Shown: piece after piece, positions 5,049 to 39,855 of the stretch
Layout of the letters: every line of letters starts with the position of its first letter
How positions within the stretch are numbered: the first letter of the stretch is position 1
IMG/VR virus record: IMGVR_UViG_3300032770_000001
Coordinates: 391,709-455,708 of that record
Length of the DNA stretch: 64,000 nt
Direction: 5' to 3' (one strand)
Notes under the pieces: generated by a model
What the model was told of the DNA's origin: nothing
Seen by the model: the letters and a program-made list of their open reading frames with translations, nothing else
The model's database searches: none
Made by a program: the position numbers and the translations under genes

Positions 5049-5057
5049 GTCGCTGAC

Positions 5058-5079
5058 CTCTGATTAGAAGTTCGATAGT
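5058..5079 (-). promoter_or_regulatory. Putative late promoter (ACTAT-N12-CAGAG)
   Basis: Match to the recurring bipartite motif upstream of structural genes. Confidence 0.55.
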
Positions 5080-5118
5080 TGATTTTCGGGTAAATTTCCC
5101 CAAAACCGAAATCTCGCG

Positions 5119-5138
5119 ACTTCGGAGTTCCTTAATAG
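5119..5138 (+). promoter_or_regulatory. Putative late promoter (ACTTC-N12-TAG)
   Basis: Same motif, divergent orientation, upstream of 5151. Confidence 0.55.
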
Positions 5139-5150
5139 CGAGGCTTTCTC

Positions 5151-6454: not shown

Positions 6455-6510
6455 GCAATCCTCCTATTTCCTCTCTAAAAATAGGGATTTGATAGTCGGC
6501 GAATTCGCCC

Positions 6511-6531
6511 AATATCAAACCGTAGTTAGAG
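6511..6531 (+). promoter_or_regulatory. Putative late promoter (AATAT-N11-TAGAG)
   Basis: Variant of the bipartite motif upstream of 6558. Confidence 0.45.
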
Positions 6532-6557
6532 GAAACTTTCCTTAGAGGCACACATCA

Positions 6558-7889: not shown

Positions 7890-7908
7890 TCCTTCACGGA
7901 TTAGCGCG

Positions 7909-7940
7909 AGGGGCGGCTGATTTGCCGCCCCTTCTTTTTT
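7909..7940 (+). terminator. Rho-independent terminator
   Basis: aggggcggc-tgattt-gccgcccct followed by a T-tract. Confidence 0.85.
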
Positions 7941-8018: not shown

Positions 8019-8777
8019 ATGAGTGAGAATACACCGTACTTCGACAGCATCACATCCGCCCGTGCAATGCTCCTCGATGAGGATGAAGCCCTTCATGGCG
8101 CAACCCTGCTTTCGATGGAGTCCGATCCGGAGTTTGCCCGTGAGCAGAAAACCCTTGCCTACATCCAAGACAACTTCCCATCGTTCCTGAAGTACCTGCG
8201 GGAACTGAAAAAGGAAGATCAGGAATTGCTCCTGAGCTACTACATTCTCGCCAAGACCCAGAACACGCTCGCGGTGATCCACCGCAGCACTCAAACAGTG
8301 TGCAGCTTCCGCATCCGCATGGCCCGCAAGGTGCTGGGAGCCATGATGCTCTGGAACGGCGTGCCGGACGAAACCATCATGAGTCCGATCCTTGCCAAAG
8401 CAGGACTGGAAGACGGTTTGGCTCAGGAGGATGGCACTCCGGTCGCCCTGTCCACCGTGATCGCCATGTACGCCAAGACCCGCAGCTTCCAGAAGATCGC
8501 CGAGGTCTTCAAGCTCCACCGCCCGGACATCCGCCGCGCCATGAGCCGTTCATCCAAGACCTTGATGGAGACCAAGGACCCGGAGCAGCACGCACTGGGA
8601 GCCTACATCCACAGCTTGATCGACAAGGCAAATCCCAGCGGCACCGGATTTTCCAAAAGAAAAGTCTCGAAACTCGGTAATATATATCGTACAGACCCGG
8701 ATATTCTGGGTGAGTTCCGCATCAAAGTGGATGACCCTGAGTTCGAACACATGTTTGTTTCGAGAGCTAACCGATGA
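8019..8777 (+). CDS. Transcription factor with tandem sigma-region-4-like HTH domains
   Basis: LKKEDQELLLSYYILAKTQNTLAVIHRSTQTVCSFRIRMARKVL and YAKTRSFQKIAEVFKLHRPDIRRAMSR resemble sigma-70 region 4. Confidence 0.6.
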   Translation: MSENTPYFDSITSARAMLLDEDEALHGATLLSMESDPEFAREQKTLAYIQDNFPSFLKYLRELKKEDQELLLSYYILAKTQNTLAVIHRSTQTVCSFRIRMARKVLGAMMLWNGVPDETIMSPILAKAGLEDGLAQEDGTPVALSTVIAMYAKTRSFQKIAEVFKLHRPDIRRAMSRSSKTLMETKDPEQHALGAYIHSLIDKANPSGTGFSKRKVSKLGNIYRTDPDILGEFRIKVDDPEFEHMFVSRANR

Positions 8778-9046
8778 ACGATCAAGAGCTTCAGCAACAT
8801 AGATTAGAGCAAGAACGCGAGGATTCGCGCAGACGGTATCGACTCGTATGCATCAAACAACTGTTGGAAAGCGAGGGCGGTCGCGACAAGTTCGCAACCT
8901 CGTTGGCGGAAGTTCTTCGTCGGAAGCCGGAGGCAACTCGCTTCGCAATAACCGAGACTAGGATTGAGGAAACGGTCGAGGCTCTCGGTAGGGAGTATGA
9001 GCAGCGTTTGCGGGATGTTTTTGAAGTTGCAAAAACGAGAATTTAG
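8774..9046 (+). CDS. Small protein carrying an MCP N-terminal-arm-like motif
   Basis: QLLESEGGRDKFATSLAEVLRR vs MCP QLLKTAGGRQKLAASLGPSLRR (13/22 identical by hand); ATGA-coupled to 8019..8777. Confidence 0.75.
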   Translation: MNDQELQQHRLEQEREDSRRRYRLVCIKQLLESEGGRDKFATSLAEVLRRKPEATRFAITETRIEETVEALGREYEQRLRDVFEVAKTRI

Positions 9047-9054
9047 GAGAGAGT

Positions 9055-9237
9055 ATGACACTCGATATGGTCAAAGCAGTGATTGAACGCGCCAGCGTGG
9101 GGCGCACACCCCAAACGATCAAGTCTTCAGTCGGCTTGTCGTTCCCGGAAGTGAACTACATCATCGAACAGTTCCGCCGTGGTCAAAACGCGAAGCAGAT
9201 CACTGAGACGATGAACAAAAAAGGCTTCAAGCTGTAA
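9055..9237 (+). CDS. Small hypothetical protein, possible HTH with an internal duplication
   Basis: 60 aa, RBS AGGAGA; IERASVGRTPQTI / IEQFRRGQNAKQI. Confidence 0.7.
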   Translation: MTLDMVKAVIERASVGRTPQTIKSSVGLSFPEVNYIIEQFRRGQNAKQITETMNKKGFKL

Positions 9238-9248
9238 GGAAATCCTCA

Positions 9249-9257
9249 GTATTGAAT
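9249..9257 (+). promoter_or_regulatory. Putative middle-class promoter element GTATT-N3-T
   Basis: gtattgaat in the intergenic region upstream of 9310. Confidence 0.4.
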
Positions 9258-9309
9258 AGTGTGTCCCTAACGGGCATGTACCAATTTTCAAGATACTGAG
9301 GATAGTTCC

Positions 9310-9807
9310 ATGCGTACTTTTTCTGTTGAACCGCAGTTCAACGACACCGTTGACATGCTTGCCCTAGCCATTGGCTATCTTTCCGAACCAACCCCCAACA
9401 ACTCCATCGGACAAGCGGCGACCGACGCCGAGGCCGAAGCTCTAATCAAAGAGGCTGAGAAAGGCGGTCAGGTCGCTCAATACGTCATCTTCAACCCGCA
9501 AGATTATCACCTATTTCGCTACCGCAATCCGCGTCTCATCCATCACTTCGATTACGAGACACAGCAGCGCCTCGTCCGCCGTGGCATCGTTGGCTACCTG
9601 TGGGGAACCACGGTCGTGCTCGACAAGAATGTCACACGCGGCTATATCGTAGTCAGTGCGGACAGCCGCGAGAATGCGTTGAAGAGCGACAAATCCCTTA
9701 TTGTCGAGATCAGCAAGTTGGAAATTCCGAATCTTTCGATCACTGTGTCGAAAGCGAGTACGGACTGGTCGAACGGGCCATGCCCGGTATCGCAAGATCA
9801 AGACTAG
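9310..9807 (+). CDS. Truncated MCP paralog (A-domain-like segment only)
   Basis: VIFNPQDY...DYETQQRLVRRGIVGYLWGTTVVLDKNVTRGYIVVSAD aligns to MCP VFFNPRDY...DRETQRKLLKTGVMGYLWGATLLQSRKVGYGSIYILAD; RBS GAGGA. Confidence 0.85.
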   Translation: MRTFSVEPQFNDTVDMLALAIGYLSEPTPNNSIGQAATDAEAEALIKEAEKGGQVAQYVIFNPQDYHLFRYRNPRLIHHFDYETQQRLVRRGIVGYLWGTTVVLDKNVTRGYIVVSADSRENALKSDKSLIVEISKLEIPNLSITVSKASTDWSNGPCPVSQDQD

Positions 9808-10811
9808 GACTTTGGGAGACCCAACACGCTCATGATCCGGGCGACTTCGGCTGGATCATTCTTGATGGGTGCTGTCGCAAAGGGATCGGTCGGATTAAAG
9901 CAGGAGCGAACCATCTCGCTCCATGTCCGGTCGGATTCCCATCGACAGTTTTCCTCACTCCAATGGATGGATGAGAGTCTGGTTTTGAACACTGTGCGCT
10001 TGCCGAACTTGATGAGCACGTATGGCGTGCCGAAATCGGTGATTATCTGCCAGACCACGCCTGTACCCTTGCCGACGACCGTGATCTGCGTCCCCGGCTG
10101 GATTCCCCTGCCGTAACCACGCAACGTTTCATGTCGCCACGCTTCATCTTGAAAGTACCGCAGTCCATCATCCTTCCAGCCGTAATCCTTCACCCAGAGG
10201 GGCACACGCAGGCTGCTCTCGCCGTTGTCGAAACGAGACTCGGTAAGAAACATATCGACGTTGAAAGCTGACAGGTTCTTCAACCATTCTTCGGCGACAC
10301 GCACCTTCGGCGGCAGTACGTCCATCGGGATCACGAAATTCTTTGGATACCCGTACTGCGCCCTGTAGCCGACCTCGCATTCAATGATCGAGCCCCACAG
10401 TGCGACCTGTCCGTGGATGCCCTTCTCCGCGTATTTGATCCGCACCAGATGGGCGAAGTCCTTGGCGGCATAGATACCGCAGCGGCAGTCATCGACTGGA
10501 GATTCGTGTTTCACGACGTTCAAGAAAAACCATCGGGCTTCCGCCTCGGTCATTGGTTCCCTCGCACCGAGGTCGATGAACTGACCATCGGCGGTGAGCG
10601 AGGGACTGGCTCCGCGAACGCGAGTGTTCACCCAACTGGTAAAGTTGTGAACCTTCGGCTTCATGTAATGCTTGGTGATGGCTTTGTTGCAGGTCGCAAC
10701 CATTGCCTGTCCGGGAACCCACGGCTCATGGTTGAGCGACGTGAGCCCCCTAGCGTCCCAATCCCACGTGCGGTACGCGATGAGAGGATCGATGTAATCA
10801 GGGATTATCAT
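9804..10811 (-). CDS. Conserved phage hypothetical protein (AYRxW...CxCGIYA...GxVxLWG...GYRAQY)
   Basis: Start moved to MIIPDY at 10811 (ATGA overlap with the upstream gene); motif pattern recognised from other phage proteins. Confidence 0.75.
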   Translation of the reverse strand: MIIPDYIDPLIAYRTWDWDARGLTSLNHEPWVPGQAMVATCNKAITKHYMKPKVHNFTSWVNTRVRGASPSLTADGQFIDLGAREPMTEAEARWFFLNVVKHESPVDDCRCGIYAAKDFAHLVRIKYAEKGIHGQVALWGSIIECEVGYRAQYGYPKNFVIPMDVLPPKVRVAEEWLKNLSAFNVDMFLTESRFDNGESSLRVPLWVKDYGWKDDGLRYFQDEAWRHETLRGYGRGIQPGTQITVVGKGTGVVWQIITDFGTPYVLIKFGKRTVFKTRLSSIHWSEENCRWESDRTWSEMVRSCFNPTDPFATAPIKNDPAEVARIMSVLGLPKS

Positions 10812-10993
10812 TCTTGTCCGAGGAATGGGTGAAACTCTTCCCACGGCCCGTCGCCGAAGTTGTAGACCGAGACCACGCCGTCATCCCAATGGATTTCGAA
10901 CTTGATCCAACTGAGCACCTTGACGGTGCCCTTGACGCCGGAGTCGTTCAGAATGACGCGGCGTCCTGTCACAATTTCCTGTGCGAATGTCAT
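10808..10993 (-). CDS. Small SH3-like early protein
   Basis: 61 aa; overlaps both neighbours by coupled start/stop codons. Confidence 0.7.
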   Translation of the reverse strand: MTFAQEIVTGRRVILNDSGVKGTVKVLSWIKFEIHWDDGVVSVYNFGDGPWEEFHPFLGQE

Positions 10994-38196: not shown

Positions 38197-38802
38197 TCAA
38201 AGGAACCGGGCGTGCACTTCACGCATGTACGCGGGGTCGCACTTGTGGGTCGTAATCATGTCGTTCCCCGGCGTCGGGAACCGCCAGTGCAGGTTGCTGT
38301 GCACATAACGTTGGTCGTCGAACAGCGGTGCTTTCTGGTTCATTACCAGATAGTAGCCGACCGAGGAATCTTCGAGCTTACGATTCTTCCATTCTTGCTC
38401 CGGCTCGGCGACGAGAATCTTCATCGCACGCCGCGACAGCCAGTACCCGCAGCCGCCTGCCGCATAGAACAGTTGCCGTGCGCTTCCGCAATAGTCATGG
38501 TACTGATAGCCGGAGGCGAGCAGACGGGGGATGTGCACATAGGTGTCATCATCCGCTTTGAACAGGTTGGTGTAGTCGCGCTCCAGCGTCCACTTCATCG
38601 TGTAAAACAGCTTCAGCGGCAGACTCTCGTAATTGTCGGGAACGGGTAGGTAGACTTCATCCTTCTTGGCCCGTTTCTTCGGATCACCGATGAAGAATCG
38701 GTAGTCGATCTCTTTGCCCCATGTTTTCAACCACGTGTCACGGCAGGCGTCCTGCTGTTCTTTGAAGGCGTGACAGGTGAGGATGGCGAGGAGAGGTTTC
38801 AC
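38197..38802 (-). CDS. Glycosyltransferase, GT31 (galactosyltransferase/Fringe-like) family
   Basis: RDTW, DNYESLPLK, FKADDDTYV (DxD), GGCGYWLS, EDSSVG, TTHK motifs; GTG start at 38802 behind GTATT-N3-T-N4. Confidence 0.85.
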   Translation of the reverse strand: MKPLLAILTCHAFKEQQDACRDTWLKTWGKEIDYRFFIGDPKKRAKKDEVYLPVPDNYESLPLKLFYTMKWTLERDYTNLFKADDDTYVHIPRLLASGYQYHDYCGSARQLFYAAGGCGYWLSRRAMKILVAEPEQEWKNRKLEDSSVGYYLVMNQKAPLFDDQRYVHSNLHWRFPTPGNDMITTHKCDPAYMREVHARFL

Positions 38803-38836
38803 ACTAAATAAATACCGCGTCCTATGTCCAATCCAC

Positions 38837-38867
38837 AAAAGAAAAGGGCTCGCATCGCTGCGAGCCC
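38837..38867 (-). terminator. Terminator after the MCP gene
   Basis: gggctcgca-gcga-tgcgagccc followed by ttttctttt. Confidence 0.9.
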
Positions 38868-38895: not shown

Positions 38896-39855
38896 TTAGT
38901 TCTCGCCGTAGTTGGCGGTCGAGTTGAAGCGACCATTGACCGTAAGACGCTGCACGCCGGACGGGTTGAACACGAGGAAGCCGAGGTTCTCGAAGATCGA
39001 GAAGCCGATCTGACGGAGGTCAGGACGGTCGGCGCTCATGACCGTGAGCGGAATACGCTCTGGGATAACGCCGAGGAACTCTGCGTCCGCCAGAATGTAG
39101 ATCGAGCCGTAGCCGACCTTACGCGACTGGAGGAGCGTTGCGCCCCAGAGATAGCCCATCACGCCCGTTTTCAACAGCTTGCGCTGTGTTTCGCGGTCGA
39201 TGTTCTGTTGGGTCCACTTCAACAGGTCCGTGTAGTCACGGGGGTTGAAGAAGACGAACGCGACTGAGAGGTCATGACGCTGCACCTGACCAAAGCCGTC
39301 TGCCATCGAGTTGATGTCAATCGGAGCGTTGATCGGAATGTCAGGGTTGTAGACCGGATCATTCGAGTTCTTACCCGCTGCGCTGTTCGCGACACCGTCA
39401 AACAGAACGAACACGTATCCGTCTTCGGCTGCGCCCACTTCGGCTTTCGCCAAGTTCAGTGAACGAGCAACCAAGTCGAAACGGCGCTCTTTGATCTGCG
39501 TGATCGGGATCATCGGATTGGACACGATTTCGAACGTCGGAACCGTGACGCGCTTCGGTTTTGTAACGCGGACGATGTCACCACCTTCTTCGCCGACGAT
39601 GAATGCTTCGACGAAGGACGAACCCGGAGTCGAGCCAACGGTCATCGCGTTGACATCGAATTCCTTGTCGTAGATGGGCAGTGCGCCATCCGGAAGAGTT
39701 TCGACCATGAGAGCCTTGCGAGCAATGCTCATATAGTCACGGCGACGACGCAGGGACGGACCGAGCGAAGCCGCAAGCTTCTGACGCCCACCCGCCGTCT
39801 TCAAAAGTTGGCCGAGCATTTGCGTCTGCTGTTGTGTGCGAGAAAGTTGTGCCAT
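38896..39855 (-). CDS. Major capsid protein (HK97 fold)
   Basis: 319 aa; gene order protease-scaffold-decoration-MCP-terminator; DYMSIARKALMVETLPDGALPIYDKE, VPTFEIVSNP, GFSIFENLGFLVFNP; GAGGAG RBS. Confidence 0.9.
   Translation of the reverse strand: MAQLSRTQQQTQMLGQLLKTAGGRQKLAASLGPSLRRRRDYMSIARKALMVETLPDGALPIYDKEFDVNAMTVGSTPGSSFVEAFIVGEEGGDIVRVTKPKRVTVPTFEIVSNPMIPITQIKERRFDLVARSLNLAKAEVGAAEDGYVFVLFDGVANSAAGKNSNDPVYNPDIPINAPIDINSMADGFGQVQRHDLSVAFVFFNPRDYTDLLKWTQQNIDRETQRKLLKTGVMGYLWGATLLQSRKVGYGSIYILADAEFLGVIPERIPLTVMSADRPDLRQIGFSIFENLGFLVFNPSGVQRLTVNGRFNSTANYGEN

What the first reader, a model, noticed from the sequence alone, without database searches (positions are those of the whole stretch)
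9310..9807. Stand-alone fragment of the major capsid protein: possible decoy or assembly modulator
Seen: a 165-aa gene 30 kb from the MCP, on the opposite strand, matches only one internal MCP segment (6/8 and 17/38 ungapped identities by hand, including GYLWG). It has its own RBS and a GTATT-type rather than late promoter. Known: several defence systems (e.g. CapRel, Lit) are triggered by capsid proteins. Inference: the segment corresponds to the HK97 A-domain, expressed before the real MCP as a decoy for capsid sensors, or as a poison/chaperone of capsid assembly. Its divergence with an intact frame suggests selection rather than debris.
Basis: partly seen in the sequence, partly recalled or inferred. 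Interest (0 to 1): 0.82.

Follow-up and report, generated by a model that had tools for sequence, protein, structure and literature searches.

The report
Stand-alone capsid A-domain gene, jumbo phage
A giant wetland phage carries, far from its capsid gene, a small conserved gene that encodes only the central "axial" domain of the capsid protein, preceded by an unusually conserved RNA leader that hides its ribosome-binding site; the gene is real and under selection, but its role (capsid-protein cap or shield, immune decoy, or something else) is untested.

Summary
ORF 9310..9807 (+), 165 aa, is homologous to the window's major capsid protein (MCP, 38896..39855 −): BLASTP 24/63 identities, E 4e-13; profile-profile 99.2%, E 2e-19. 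A confident model (pLDDT 82) superposes on the whole HK97 A-domain (HK97 gp5 240-383, Z 9.4). So it is a complete stand-alone A-domain without N-arm, E-loop or spine helix, and more than one segment.

It is not debris. Homologs in about 10 contigs give dN/dS of 0.12-0.31. Distant 100-190-aa relatives exist, and a tree separates all mini-proteins from all G-type MCPs, indicating an old duplication.

It is accessory: absent from phage G and LR745208, and 36% identical between two phages whose MCPs are 94% identical.

The "GTATT promoter" is instead the 5' arm of a ~70-nt structured leader that pairs with the Shine-Dalgarno sequence. The leader is better conserved than the protein, unique in the genome, and moves with the gene, often directly after amber-suppressor tRNA genes. 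Early expression is unsupported.

The closest described kind is the cellular "A-domain encapsulins" (DUF1884); sequence membership is not met.

Favoured mechanism (inferred, about 0.3): a cap or shield on free MCP at its capsomer-forming face. A direct decoy for immune sensors is the main rival.

The parts
9310..9807 (+). ORF165: stand-alone HK97 A-domain protein (165 aa). Helix 13-24, variable linker 34-55, A-domain core 56-136, conserved low-confidence tail 137-165 (…TDWSNGPCPV…).
   Evidence: ORF. Homology to the MCP. AF2 model with pLDDT 81.7, and >90 across 56-140. Fold matches to HK97 gp5 240-383 at Z 9.4. dN/dS 0.12-0.31. The TAG is a true stop, because homologs stop at the equivalent place with TGA or TAA.
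9241..9309 (+). Conserved structured 5' leader. Outer helix: 5' arm 9244-9252 (CCUCAGUAU) pairs with 3' arm 9293-9301 (AUACUGAGG), which contains the SD GAGG at 9298-9301. Apical hairpin CCC-UAAC-GGG at 9265-9274.
   Evidence: MFE -26.8 kcal/mol, z -3.3. Present upstream of every close homolog. Compensatory changes in the inner helices. No Rfam match. Single copy in the 455.7-kb genome.
8019..9237 (+). Upstream cistrons probably co-transcribed with ORF165: a 252-aa protein with borderline antiterminator-Q / sigma-70 region 4 matches (8019..8777), a 90-aa ORF (8774..9046) and a 60-aa ORF (9055..9237).
   Evidence: ORFs and short gaps. Pfam PF06530 at 25.9 bits against a cutoff of 26. The same order (252 aa, 59 aa, target) occurs in contig L004.
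7908..7933 (+). Terminator-like stem-loop (10 pairs, 8 G-C, followed by a T run) that delimits the start of the transcription unit containing ORF165.
   Evidence: consensus scan only.
9804..10844 (-). Convergent 346-aa gene of unknown function. Its stop overlaps the ORF165 stop in the palindrome CTAG (9804-9807).
   Evidence: Homologs of 327-329 aa occur in L004 and L012. No family match.
38896..39855 (-). Major capsid protein (319 aa), phage G / Tunturi_5 type; the parent family of ORF165.
39016..39324 (-). MCP residues 178-280: the A-domain segment (with the adjoining strand) that is homologous to ORF165 residues 11-136.
   Evidence: hhalign, multiple alignment, and the structural alignment to 6wkk_A 138-280.

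Best explanation
ORF165 is a real accessory gene encoding only the axial (A) domain of the HK97 capsid fold. It belongs to an old family of 100-200-aa stand-alone A-domain proteins that split from the phage-G-type MCP lineage by duplication and truncation (shown). It lacks the N-arm, E-loop and spine helix that tie capsomers into a lattice. It keeps the axis-proximal motif shared with the MCP (D-x-E-T-Q … G-x-x-G-Y-L-W-G-A/T-T) (shown). Its translation is gated by a gene-specific ~70-nt leader whose outer helix base-pairs with the Shine-Dalgarno sequence (structure supported; regulatory effect inferred). Favoured mechanism (inferred): the protein docks on newly made, unassembled MCP as a neighbouring subunit's A-domain would, capping the penton/hexon-forming face. 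Such a cap would restrain premature or off-pathway capsomer formation. It would also hide the surface that host MCP sensors recognise, until stronger MCP-MCP contacts displace it during procapsid assembly. The leader would keep its dose or timing matched to MCP production. Identity and selection: confidence about 0.9. This particular mechanism: about 0.3.
For: Homology and fold. Truncation to the A-domain only: the model aligns to HK97 gp5 240-383 and to 6wkk 138-280, and there is no match to the full-length MCP model NF042927. Shared conserved polar motif in the mini-proteins and the MCPs. Purifying selection. Old, diverse family. Co-occurrence with a G-type MCP in a second genome, G003. Between G000 and G003 the conserved part of the mini-protein is exactly this motif block, while the N-terminus, linker and tail diverge, as expected if that block contacts the near-invariant MCP (94% identity). 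Tight translational control. Relevance of the A-domain face: Avs7/8/10 bind the penton/hexon-forming A-domain interface (preprint 10.64898/2026.01.04.697583).
Against: There is no binding, expression or proteomic data. The motif conservation could reflect only the fold's core. The gene is absent from phage G and LR745208, and at best very diverged in Tunturi_5, so it is not a core assembly factor. It lies outside the virion module. It is among the fastest-diverging shared genes, 6th lowest of 92. The SD-sequestering outer helix never varies, so covariation cannot test it, and it is not kept in the most distant members.
Confidence: 0.3

Rival explanations
1. Direct immune decoy. The free A-domain binds host sensors that recognise the MCP A-domain (Avs7/8/10, Dsr1, CapRel-type, TIR/Thoeris-type) without triggering them, and so competes with the real MCP.
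For: Sensors are reported to bind the penton/hexon-forming A-domain interface. MCPs are frequent triggers. The gene has a typical anti-defence profile: accessory and patchy, fast-evolving, a mobile cassette placed among tRNAs and small genes, and outside the virion module. There is a precedent for a phage protein occupying a sensor's trigger site: DSAD1 against DSR2 (PMC11087589 abstract).
Against: No MCP-derived decoy was found in the literature searched. A truncated ligand might activate the sensor instead of blocking it. Avs7 also contacts the P-domain and E-loop. ORF165 is only 38% identical to its own MCP in the core, while the MCP is almost invariant, so surface mimicry is imperfect. There are no PADLOC matches or defence-related neighbours.
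Confidence: 0.17
2. Exapted fold with a function unrelated to the capsid, as proposed for the cellular A-domain encapsulins. It would be a small oligomeric scaffold or chaperone for another phage or host protein, or a regulator; some members carry a CxxC…CxxC insert.
For: Stand-alone A-domains exist in cells with non-capsid roles still unknown (PMC8346489), and 2pk8 matches at Z 6.8. A Cys-rich, zinc-ribbon-like insert occurs in P0002, P0003, P0008, P0009 and the L032 protein. Tunturi_5 has an A-like module fused to a region with a Walker-A motif. The gene sits next to a putative transcription regulator.
Against: There is no conserved partner gene: the neighbouring ~60-aa genes belong to two unrelated families, and the membrane one is absent from this genome. 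The family keeps the MCP-specific polar motif over deep divergence. The family was found here only with phage-G-type MCP genomes, on few data.
Confidence: 0.25
3. Dominant-negative 'poison' subunit used against co-infecting related phages (superinfection or inter-phage interference), or a minor procapsid/virion component such as a plug at capsomer or vertex centres.
For: An A-domain without lattice-forming parts could enter a capsomer ring and block lattice growth (inference from the HK97 architecture). MCP paralogs with specialised structural roles are known, for example T4 gp24 (fold hit 1yue). This genome has a further full-length MCP paralog.
Against: The phage's own MCP, being nearly invariant, would be poisoned too unless timing is strict. 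The gene lies outside the virion module. No proteomics exist for any carrier. Its fast evolution is unlike that of structural proteins.
Confidence: 0.15
4. Decaying fragment of a duplicated MCP gene, or a chance ORF.
For: It matches only part of the MCP and lies far from the virion genes.
Against: dN/dS is 0.12-0.31 with saturated synonymous sites. The start and end are conserved in about 10 contigs. The fold is predicted confidently. The gene has a dedicated conserved leader. The family branches deep in the tree.
Confidence: 0.01

Closest known systems
Family 4 'A-domain encapsulins' (Pfam DUF1884 / PF08967; structure 2PK8, P. furiosus PF0899), Andreas & Giessen 2021, PMC8346489
   Same: A small protein (~100 aa) consisting of the HK97 A-domain alone, with every other part of the fold missing. 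2pk8 aligns to the ORF165 model at Z 6.8 over 83 residues. The function is unknown in both cases.
   Different: The cellular family occurs in hyperthermophilic archaea and a few Bacteroidetes, usually downstream of an enzyme gene (hydrogenase, OsmC, GAPDH, DeoC). ORF165 is phage-encoded, has no enzyme partner and no Pfam match to PF08967. It is clearly related in sequence to its own phage's MCP type, and it has an N-terminal helix, a linker and a conserved tail.
Phage G-type HK97-fold major capsid protein (gp27, PDB 6WKK; NCBIfam NF042927; phrog_2522)
   Same: Homologous A-domain. The family profile hits only 6wkk in the PDB, at E 8e-8 over residues 156-232. The D-x-E-T-Q … GYLWGA motif is shared.
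   Different: ORF165 lacks the N-arm, E-loop, spine helix and most of the P-domain. It does not reach the family models. It is encoded outside the virion module and evolves far faster than the MCP (36% against 94% identity between G000 and G003).
Specialised MCP paralogs such as T4 gp24 (vertex protein; PDB 1YUE)
   Same: A product of MCP gene duplication retained in the same genome for a distinct role; a fold match was found.
   Different: gp24 is a full-length HK97-fold subunit that builds pentons. ORF165 is truncated to one domain and cannot make lattice contacts (inference from the missing parts).
Phage inhibitors that occupy a sensor's trigger-binding site, e.g. DSAD1 against DSR2 (PMC11087589)
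   Same: A conceptual precedent for the decoy or shield reading: a phage protein competes with a structural-protein trigger.
   Different: DSAD1 is not described as derived from the trigger. No binding of any kind has been shown for ORF165.
SD-sequestering mRNA leaders (translational operators, RNA thermometers, riboswitch expression platforms; RNase III-processed leaders such as that of lambda N) - from general knowledge
   Same: The leader helix pairs with the Shine-Dalgarno sequence. The unpaired nucleotides are strongly conserved.
   Different: No Rfam family matches. The effector (protein, ligand, temperature or processing) is unknown. The leader travels with one gene family only.

Membership tests
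HK97-fold major capsid protein, phage G type (NF042927 / phrog_2522) | Match to the family model above its cutoff over the full length | tested here: not met
   ORF165 has no NF042927 hit. It has only partial, weak PHROG hits: phrog_544 at E 0.0065 and phrog_2522 at E 0.013. The true MCP scores 124.9 bits and E 6.8e-42.
HK97-fold major capsid protein, phage G type (NF042927 / phrog_2522) | Complete fold: N-arm, E-loop, P-domain with spine helix, and A-domain | tested here: not met
   The model and alignments cover only HK97 gp5 240-383 / MCP 178-280. At 165 aa there is no room for the remaining parts.
HK97-fold major capsid protein, phage G type (NF042927 / phrog_2522) | Homology of the A-domain to the family | tested here: met
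   BLASTP E 4e-13; hhalign 99.2%, E 2e-19; profile against 6wkk E 8e-8.
A-domain encapsulins (Family 4, DUF1884 / PF08967) | Protein consists of the HK97 A-domain alone | tested here: met
   AF2 model. VIA-align to HK97 A-domains at Z 9.4 and to 2pk8 at Z 6.8.
A-domain encapsulins (Family 4, DUF1884 / PF08967) | Sequence match to Pfam PF08967 | tested here: not met
   No Pfam family at E<=1 for ORF165. None of the 20 family members matches PF08967.
A-domain encapsulins (Family 4, DUF1884 / PF08967) | Two-gene operon downstream of an enzyme (hydrogenase, OsmC, GAPDH, DeoC); cellular, thermophile genomes (PMC8346489) | tested here: not met
   The neighbours are a regulator-like gene, small ORFs or tRNAs in phage contigs.
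Anti-defence decoy or inhibitor of MCP sensors | Binds the sensor or its trigger and suppresses MCP-triggered immunity | not testable with these tools
   Only circumstantial evidence: accessory, fast-evolving and mobile, and the A-domain is the sensed surface.
Known RNA families (Rfam 15) for the 5' leader | Covariance-model match | tested here: not met
   No match at E<=1 in window 8900-10000.
Phage promoter class ('GTATT-type') | Recurrent, orientation-specific box upstream of many genes, with the ORF165 box being one of them and lying outside the transcript | tested here: inconclusive
   [CG]AGTATT[AG]NN[TC] has 21 genomic copies, about half close upstream of genes, but enrichment is modest. 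In ORF165 the box forms the 5' arm of a conserved helix complementary to the SD region, and in relatives it starts about a dozen nt after tRNA ends.

The most novel reading that the evidence does not exclude
A family of phage-encoded, MCP-derived stand-alone A-domains acts as a cap or decoy. It neutralises bacterial immune receptors that sense the capsomer-forming face of the capsid protein (Avs7/8/10, Dsr1, CapRel-like), and its synthesis is gated by a previously undescribed structured RNA leader that travels with the gene, often behind amber-suppressor tRNA genes. This would be the first anti-defence protein made from a piece of the trigger itself.
Probability: 0.2. Interest if true: 0.85.

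Novelty: new variant of a known kind. Interest (0 to 1): 0.6.

Why it matters
Capsid proteins are now known to be among the commonest triggers of bacterial immunity, and the sensed surface is the A-domain face that builds pentons and hexons. A phage gene family that expresses just this domain, separately from the capsid gene and under its own tight translational control, is a natural candidate for a new counter-defence or for a new kind of assembly control in giant capsids. It also shows that the "A-domain only" truncation of the HK97 fold, so far described in archaeal and bacterial cells, arose independently in phages and remains recognisably related to the parental capsid gene, which bears on how HK97-fold proteins are exapted. 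The leader is a separate candidate for a new cis-regulatory RNA. A possibly related gene (gp219) exists in the culturable phage Tunturi_5, which could make the question testable.

Tried and rejected
- **Expression data:** only DNA runs from wetland metagenomes hold the region, and no RNA run was listed, so timing could not be tested and read laying was not used.
- **Family libraries:** Pfam, PADLOC and NCBIfam give no family for ORF165. PHROGs give only weak MCP hits.
- **Promoter reading of GTATT:** the 13-nt box is not repeated above chance in the window. The covariance model finds a single copy in the genome. A looser box is modestly enriched genome-wide but also occurs in the virion block. 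I rejected it as evidence for early timing.
- **TAG read-through:** ORF165 ends in TAG, its frame stays open to 10116, and the genome encodes two tRNA-CUA genes. I rejected read-through because homologs end at the same place with TGA or TAA, and there is no TAG-specific recoding signal. The extension would also run antisense through a conserved convergent gene.
- **Conserved partner gene:** the ~60-aa neighbours belong to two unrelated families, and the membrane one is absent from this genome.
- **Tight co-evolution with the MCP:** rejected, because the MCP is 94% and the mini-protein 36% identical between G000 and G003. The calibration shows that the MCP is the outlier (median 57%).
- **Metagenome scan for the leader:** the pattern was too loose (120+ mostly chance hits). 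After covariance-model filtering only one new copy remained.
- **Tunturi_5 gp219:** only a possible member (E 0.016; hhalign 68%).
- **AFDB clusters:** added nothing beyond weak hits to MCPs and MCP fragments.
- **Debris hypothesis:** rejected.

Full report
**1. What is there**

The window is the last 64 kb of a 455,708-bp viral record from a wetland metagenome. Its MCP is 70% identical to that of the acidobacterial jumbo phage Tunturi_5 and 34% identical to Bacillus phage G gp27. The ORF at 9310..9807 (+) is intact, at 165 aa.

The MCP is 38896..39855 (−). This rests on phrog_2522 at 6.8e-42, NF042927 at 124.9 bits and PDB 6wkk at E 1.4e-52.

**2. Is the similarity real, and how far does it extend?**

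- BLASTP aligns ORF165 58-119 with MCP 200-258: 24/63 identities, E 4e-13.
- In a six-frame search of the whole genome the only matches besides the gene itself are the MCP (8e-10) and a second, full-length MCP paralog at about 274 kb (6.8e-6).
- Using 20 family members, the profile-profile comparison with G-type MCPs gives 99.2% probability and E 2e-19, covering ORF165 11-119 against MCP 178-258.
- The only PDB sequence hit for the family profile is phage G gp27, residues 156-232, E 8e-8.
- An AlphaFold2 model is confident: pLDDT 81.7, pTM 0.73, and above 90 for residues 56-140.
- All top Foldseek hits are HK97-fold capsid proteins.
- VIA-align places model residues 1-136 on HK97 gp5 240-383 (Z 9.4, about 97 residues, rmsd ~3.2 Å) and on 6wkk 138-280. 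It also matches lambda gpE, T4 gp23/gp24, encapsulins and the DUF1884 protein 2pk8 (Z 6.8).

So ORF165 is a complete stand-alone A-domain with one adjoining strand, preceded by the helix that precedes the A-domain sheet in MCPs. It has no N-arm, E-loop or spine helix.

**3. Gene or debris?**

- Five full-length homologs at 60-64% identity were found, with the same start.
- Pairwise dN/dS is 0.12-0.31, with synonymous sites near saturation.
- A scan of 1.84 billion representative proteins adds members of 152-191 aa, and a set of 100-172-aa proteins that share the helix motif (xLAxAFG), the strand (YVLFNPxD) and the block D-R-E-T-Q…G-x-V-G-Y-L-W-G-A-T.
- IMG/VR adds three contigs (103, 31 and 223 kb).
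[quoted passage not shown] Support is moderate, at 76/96.

The family is therefore old and diverse, and not a recent fragment of this phage's MCP. No Pfam, PHROG, NCBIfam or PADLOC family covers it.

**4. Accessory and fast-evolving**

The profile finds only the MCP in phage G and in LR745208. In Tunturi_5 it finds only a weak 115-aa candidate, gp219 (E 0.016; hhalign 68%), and an A-like module fused to a region with a Walker-A motif.

Genome G003 (223 kb) carries both a G-type MCP and a mini-protein about 40 kb apart. Between G000 and G003:

| Comparison | Identity |
|---|---|
| MCP | 94% (301/319) |
| Mini-protein | 36% (68/188) |
| 92 shared genes, median | 57% (IQR 47-66%) |

The MCP is the most conserved of the 92 shared genes and the mini-protein the sixth least conserved. 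What stays conserved in the mini-protein is the motif block it shares with the MCP. The N-terminus, the linker and the tail diverge; in several members the linker is a CxxC…CxxC insert.

**5. The leader**

The 70 nt before the ATG are better conserved (78-85% mean column identity) than the coding DNA (62-77%). They are nearly identical even in L032, where the protein is only 36% identical (91.8 bits).

The RNA folds at −26.8 kcal/mol, z −3.3, into three elements:
- an outer helix (9244-9252 with 9293-9301) that includes the SD GAGG;
- a middle helix;
- an apical hairpin with loop UAAC or CAAC.

The inner helices show compensatory changes. On the model-fitted alignment there are 6 such pairs, 0 of 500 shuffles reach this, and the signal collapses when partners are slid. 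On an independent MAFFT alignment there are two such pairs. The outer helix never varies, so it rests on thermodynamics and on the invariance of both complementary arms.

The leader has no Rfam match and occurs once in the genome. In every true copy found elsewhere it precedes a member of this protein family. The most distant members keep the CAGTATT and CAAGAAnC boxes but not the outer pairing.

**6. Context and the promoter claim**

In the window and in L004, ORF165 is the last cistron after a regulator-like 252-aa gene (borderline antiterminator-Q / sigma region 4 matches) and small ORFs. A terminator-like hairpin lies upstream at 7908-7933.

In L007, L010, L032 and L051 the leader starts about a dozen nt after a tRNA gene, in most cases after tandem tRNA-CUA genes. 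In G003 the regulator homolog and the homolog of the convergent 346-aa gene are adjacent, and the mini-protein sits at the tRNA array. So leader plus ORF behaves as a mobile cassette.

There is no room for, and no conservation of, a dedicated upstream promoter. A looser AGTATT-type box is modestly enriched upstream of genes genome-wide and also occurs inside the virion block. A clear extended −10 class (CTGGTAGAATA) also exists. Neither says anything about timing. No RNA data were listed.

**7. Stop codon**

ORF165 ends in TAG, the frame continues to 10116, and the genome encodes two amber-suppressor tRNAs. Homologs end at the equivalent position with TGA or TAA in 7 of 12 cases, and treating TAG as sense gains no more long ORFs than treating TAA as sense. 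The TAG is therefore a real stop. It shares the palindrome CTAG with the stop of the convergent gene.

**8. Mechanism**

Shown:
- an A-domain-only protein derived from the MCP;
- purifying selection;
- accessory distribution and fast divergence outside a conserved motif;
- a dedicated structured leader.

Inferred: because it keeps the axial domain and the axis-proximal polar motif but none of the lattice-forming parts, it most plausibly acts through the capsomer-forming face.

I favour a cap or shield on unassembled MCP (0.3). This needs only native-like A-A contacts, fits conservation of the shared motif against a near-invariant MCP, explains a need for dose or timing control, and would also hide the surface that Avs7/8/10 are reported to bind.

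Rivals:
- direct sensor decoy, 0.17;
- unrelated exaptation, as in the cellular A-domain encapsulins, 0.25;
- poison subunit or minor virion component, 0.15;
- debris, 0.01.

None can be separated further with the tools at hand.

**9. Comparison with what is known**

The closest described kind is the Family 4 "A-domain encapsulins" (DUF1884, 2PK8; PMC8346489). They share the architecture, but the sequence family, host and operon logic differ, and sequence membership is not met.

ORF165 is homologous to the G-type MCP family but is not a member of it as a capsid protein.

I found no description of phage-encoded stand-alone A-domains or of MCP-derived decoys. That is the limit of the library searched, not proof of absence.

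**10. Verdict**

I class it as a new variant of a known kind, with interest 0.6.

Noticed in passing
Outside the window: G000:C1:273651-274748 (+) = L003 895..1989: A second, full-length MCP paralog (365 aa; NF042927 at 47 bits, below the cutoff). It has a shortened E-loop region and an N-terminal extension that looks like a twin-arginine (Tat) signal (MQRRNFLRG…TWA; Pfam TAT_signal 19.7 bits, E 8e-4). The TTG start has a perfect AGGAGG 9 nt upstream. Homologs P0027-P0029 (46-53% identity) keep the RRxF signal, while P0030-P0032 carry a different extension. A possibly exported HK97-fold protein in a jumbo phage is unexplained.
   Followed up: partly
L007 1377-1530, L032 3763-3921, L051 1982-2134, L030 3032-3203, L010 61-140; G000:C1:25852-26052 (-): Tandem tRNA genes with a CUA (amber-suppressor) anticodon sit directly upstream of the leader and mini-protein cassette in several relatives. 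The window's genome has such a pair elsewhere among its 61 tRNAs. There is no genome-wide sign of TAG recoding in G000: the TAG-as-sense gain equals the TAA control.
   Followed up: partly
window ~13541, ~15944, ~19402 (all - strand) and 16 further sites in the genome: A clear extended -10-type promoter-like motif, CTGGTAGAATA(TA), is 12-20-fold enriched in oriented upstream regions, often 6-26 nt before a start codon as called by a crude ORF finder.
   Followed up: partly
window ~35700 (-), and G000 sites 131, 109465, 141831, 176067, 296872, 297922 and others: A [CG]AGTATT[AG]NN[TC] box lies shortly upstream of about half of its 21 genomic occurrences' nearest genes in sense orientation, for example GAGTATTACAT, then an RBS, then ATG. 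It may be a second promoter class. GTATT-like boxes also precede window genes starting at 8019 (+), 38154 (-), 25926 (-) and 63960 (-).
   Followed up: partly
window 38197..38838 (-): A galactosyltransferase-like gene (Pfam PF01762, E 2e-8; Fringe-like, weak) lies immediately downstream of the MCP gene. It may indicate virion glycosylation.
   Followed up: no
L020 1417..2304 (Tunturi_5, record 254056-254943, +): A 295-aa ORF whose N-terminus weakly matches the mini-A-domain profile (E 1.4e-3), followed by a region with a Walker-A-like motif (GRRQTGKTT). It suggests the A-domain module can be fused to other functions.
   Followed up: no
window 8774..9046 (+): The 90-aa ORF in the same operon as ORF165 has a weak PADLOC match to Cas11e / Cse2 small-subunit models (E 4.6e-4, 19 bits). 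It is probably just a helical bundle.
   Followed up: no
window 6455..6557 and 5049..5150: Two ~103-nt divergent intergenic regions. The first has a near-palindrome centred on GGCGAATTCGCC, flanked by TTTGATA / TATCAAA arms, which could be an operator between divergent genes.
   Followed up: no
BFVD hits of the ORF165 model: Short uncharacterised proteins (106-146 aa) of other jumbo phages (Erwinia vB_EamM_Y3, two proteins; Pseudomonas PaBG and Noxifer; Achromobacter Motura) give weak structural matches (E 1e-3 to 0.15, TM 0.4-0.5). Stand-alone A-domain-like proteins may be more widespread among jumbo phages.
   Followed up: no
window 9804-9807: ORF165 and the convergent 346-aa gene share their stop codons in the 4-nt palindrome CTAG. 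All homologs with a convergent downstream gene (L004, L012, L051) also end in TAG.
   Followed up: yes
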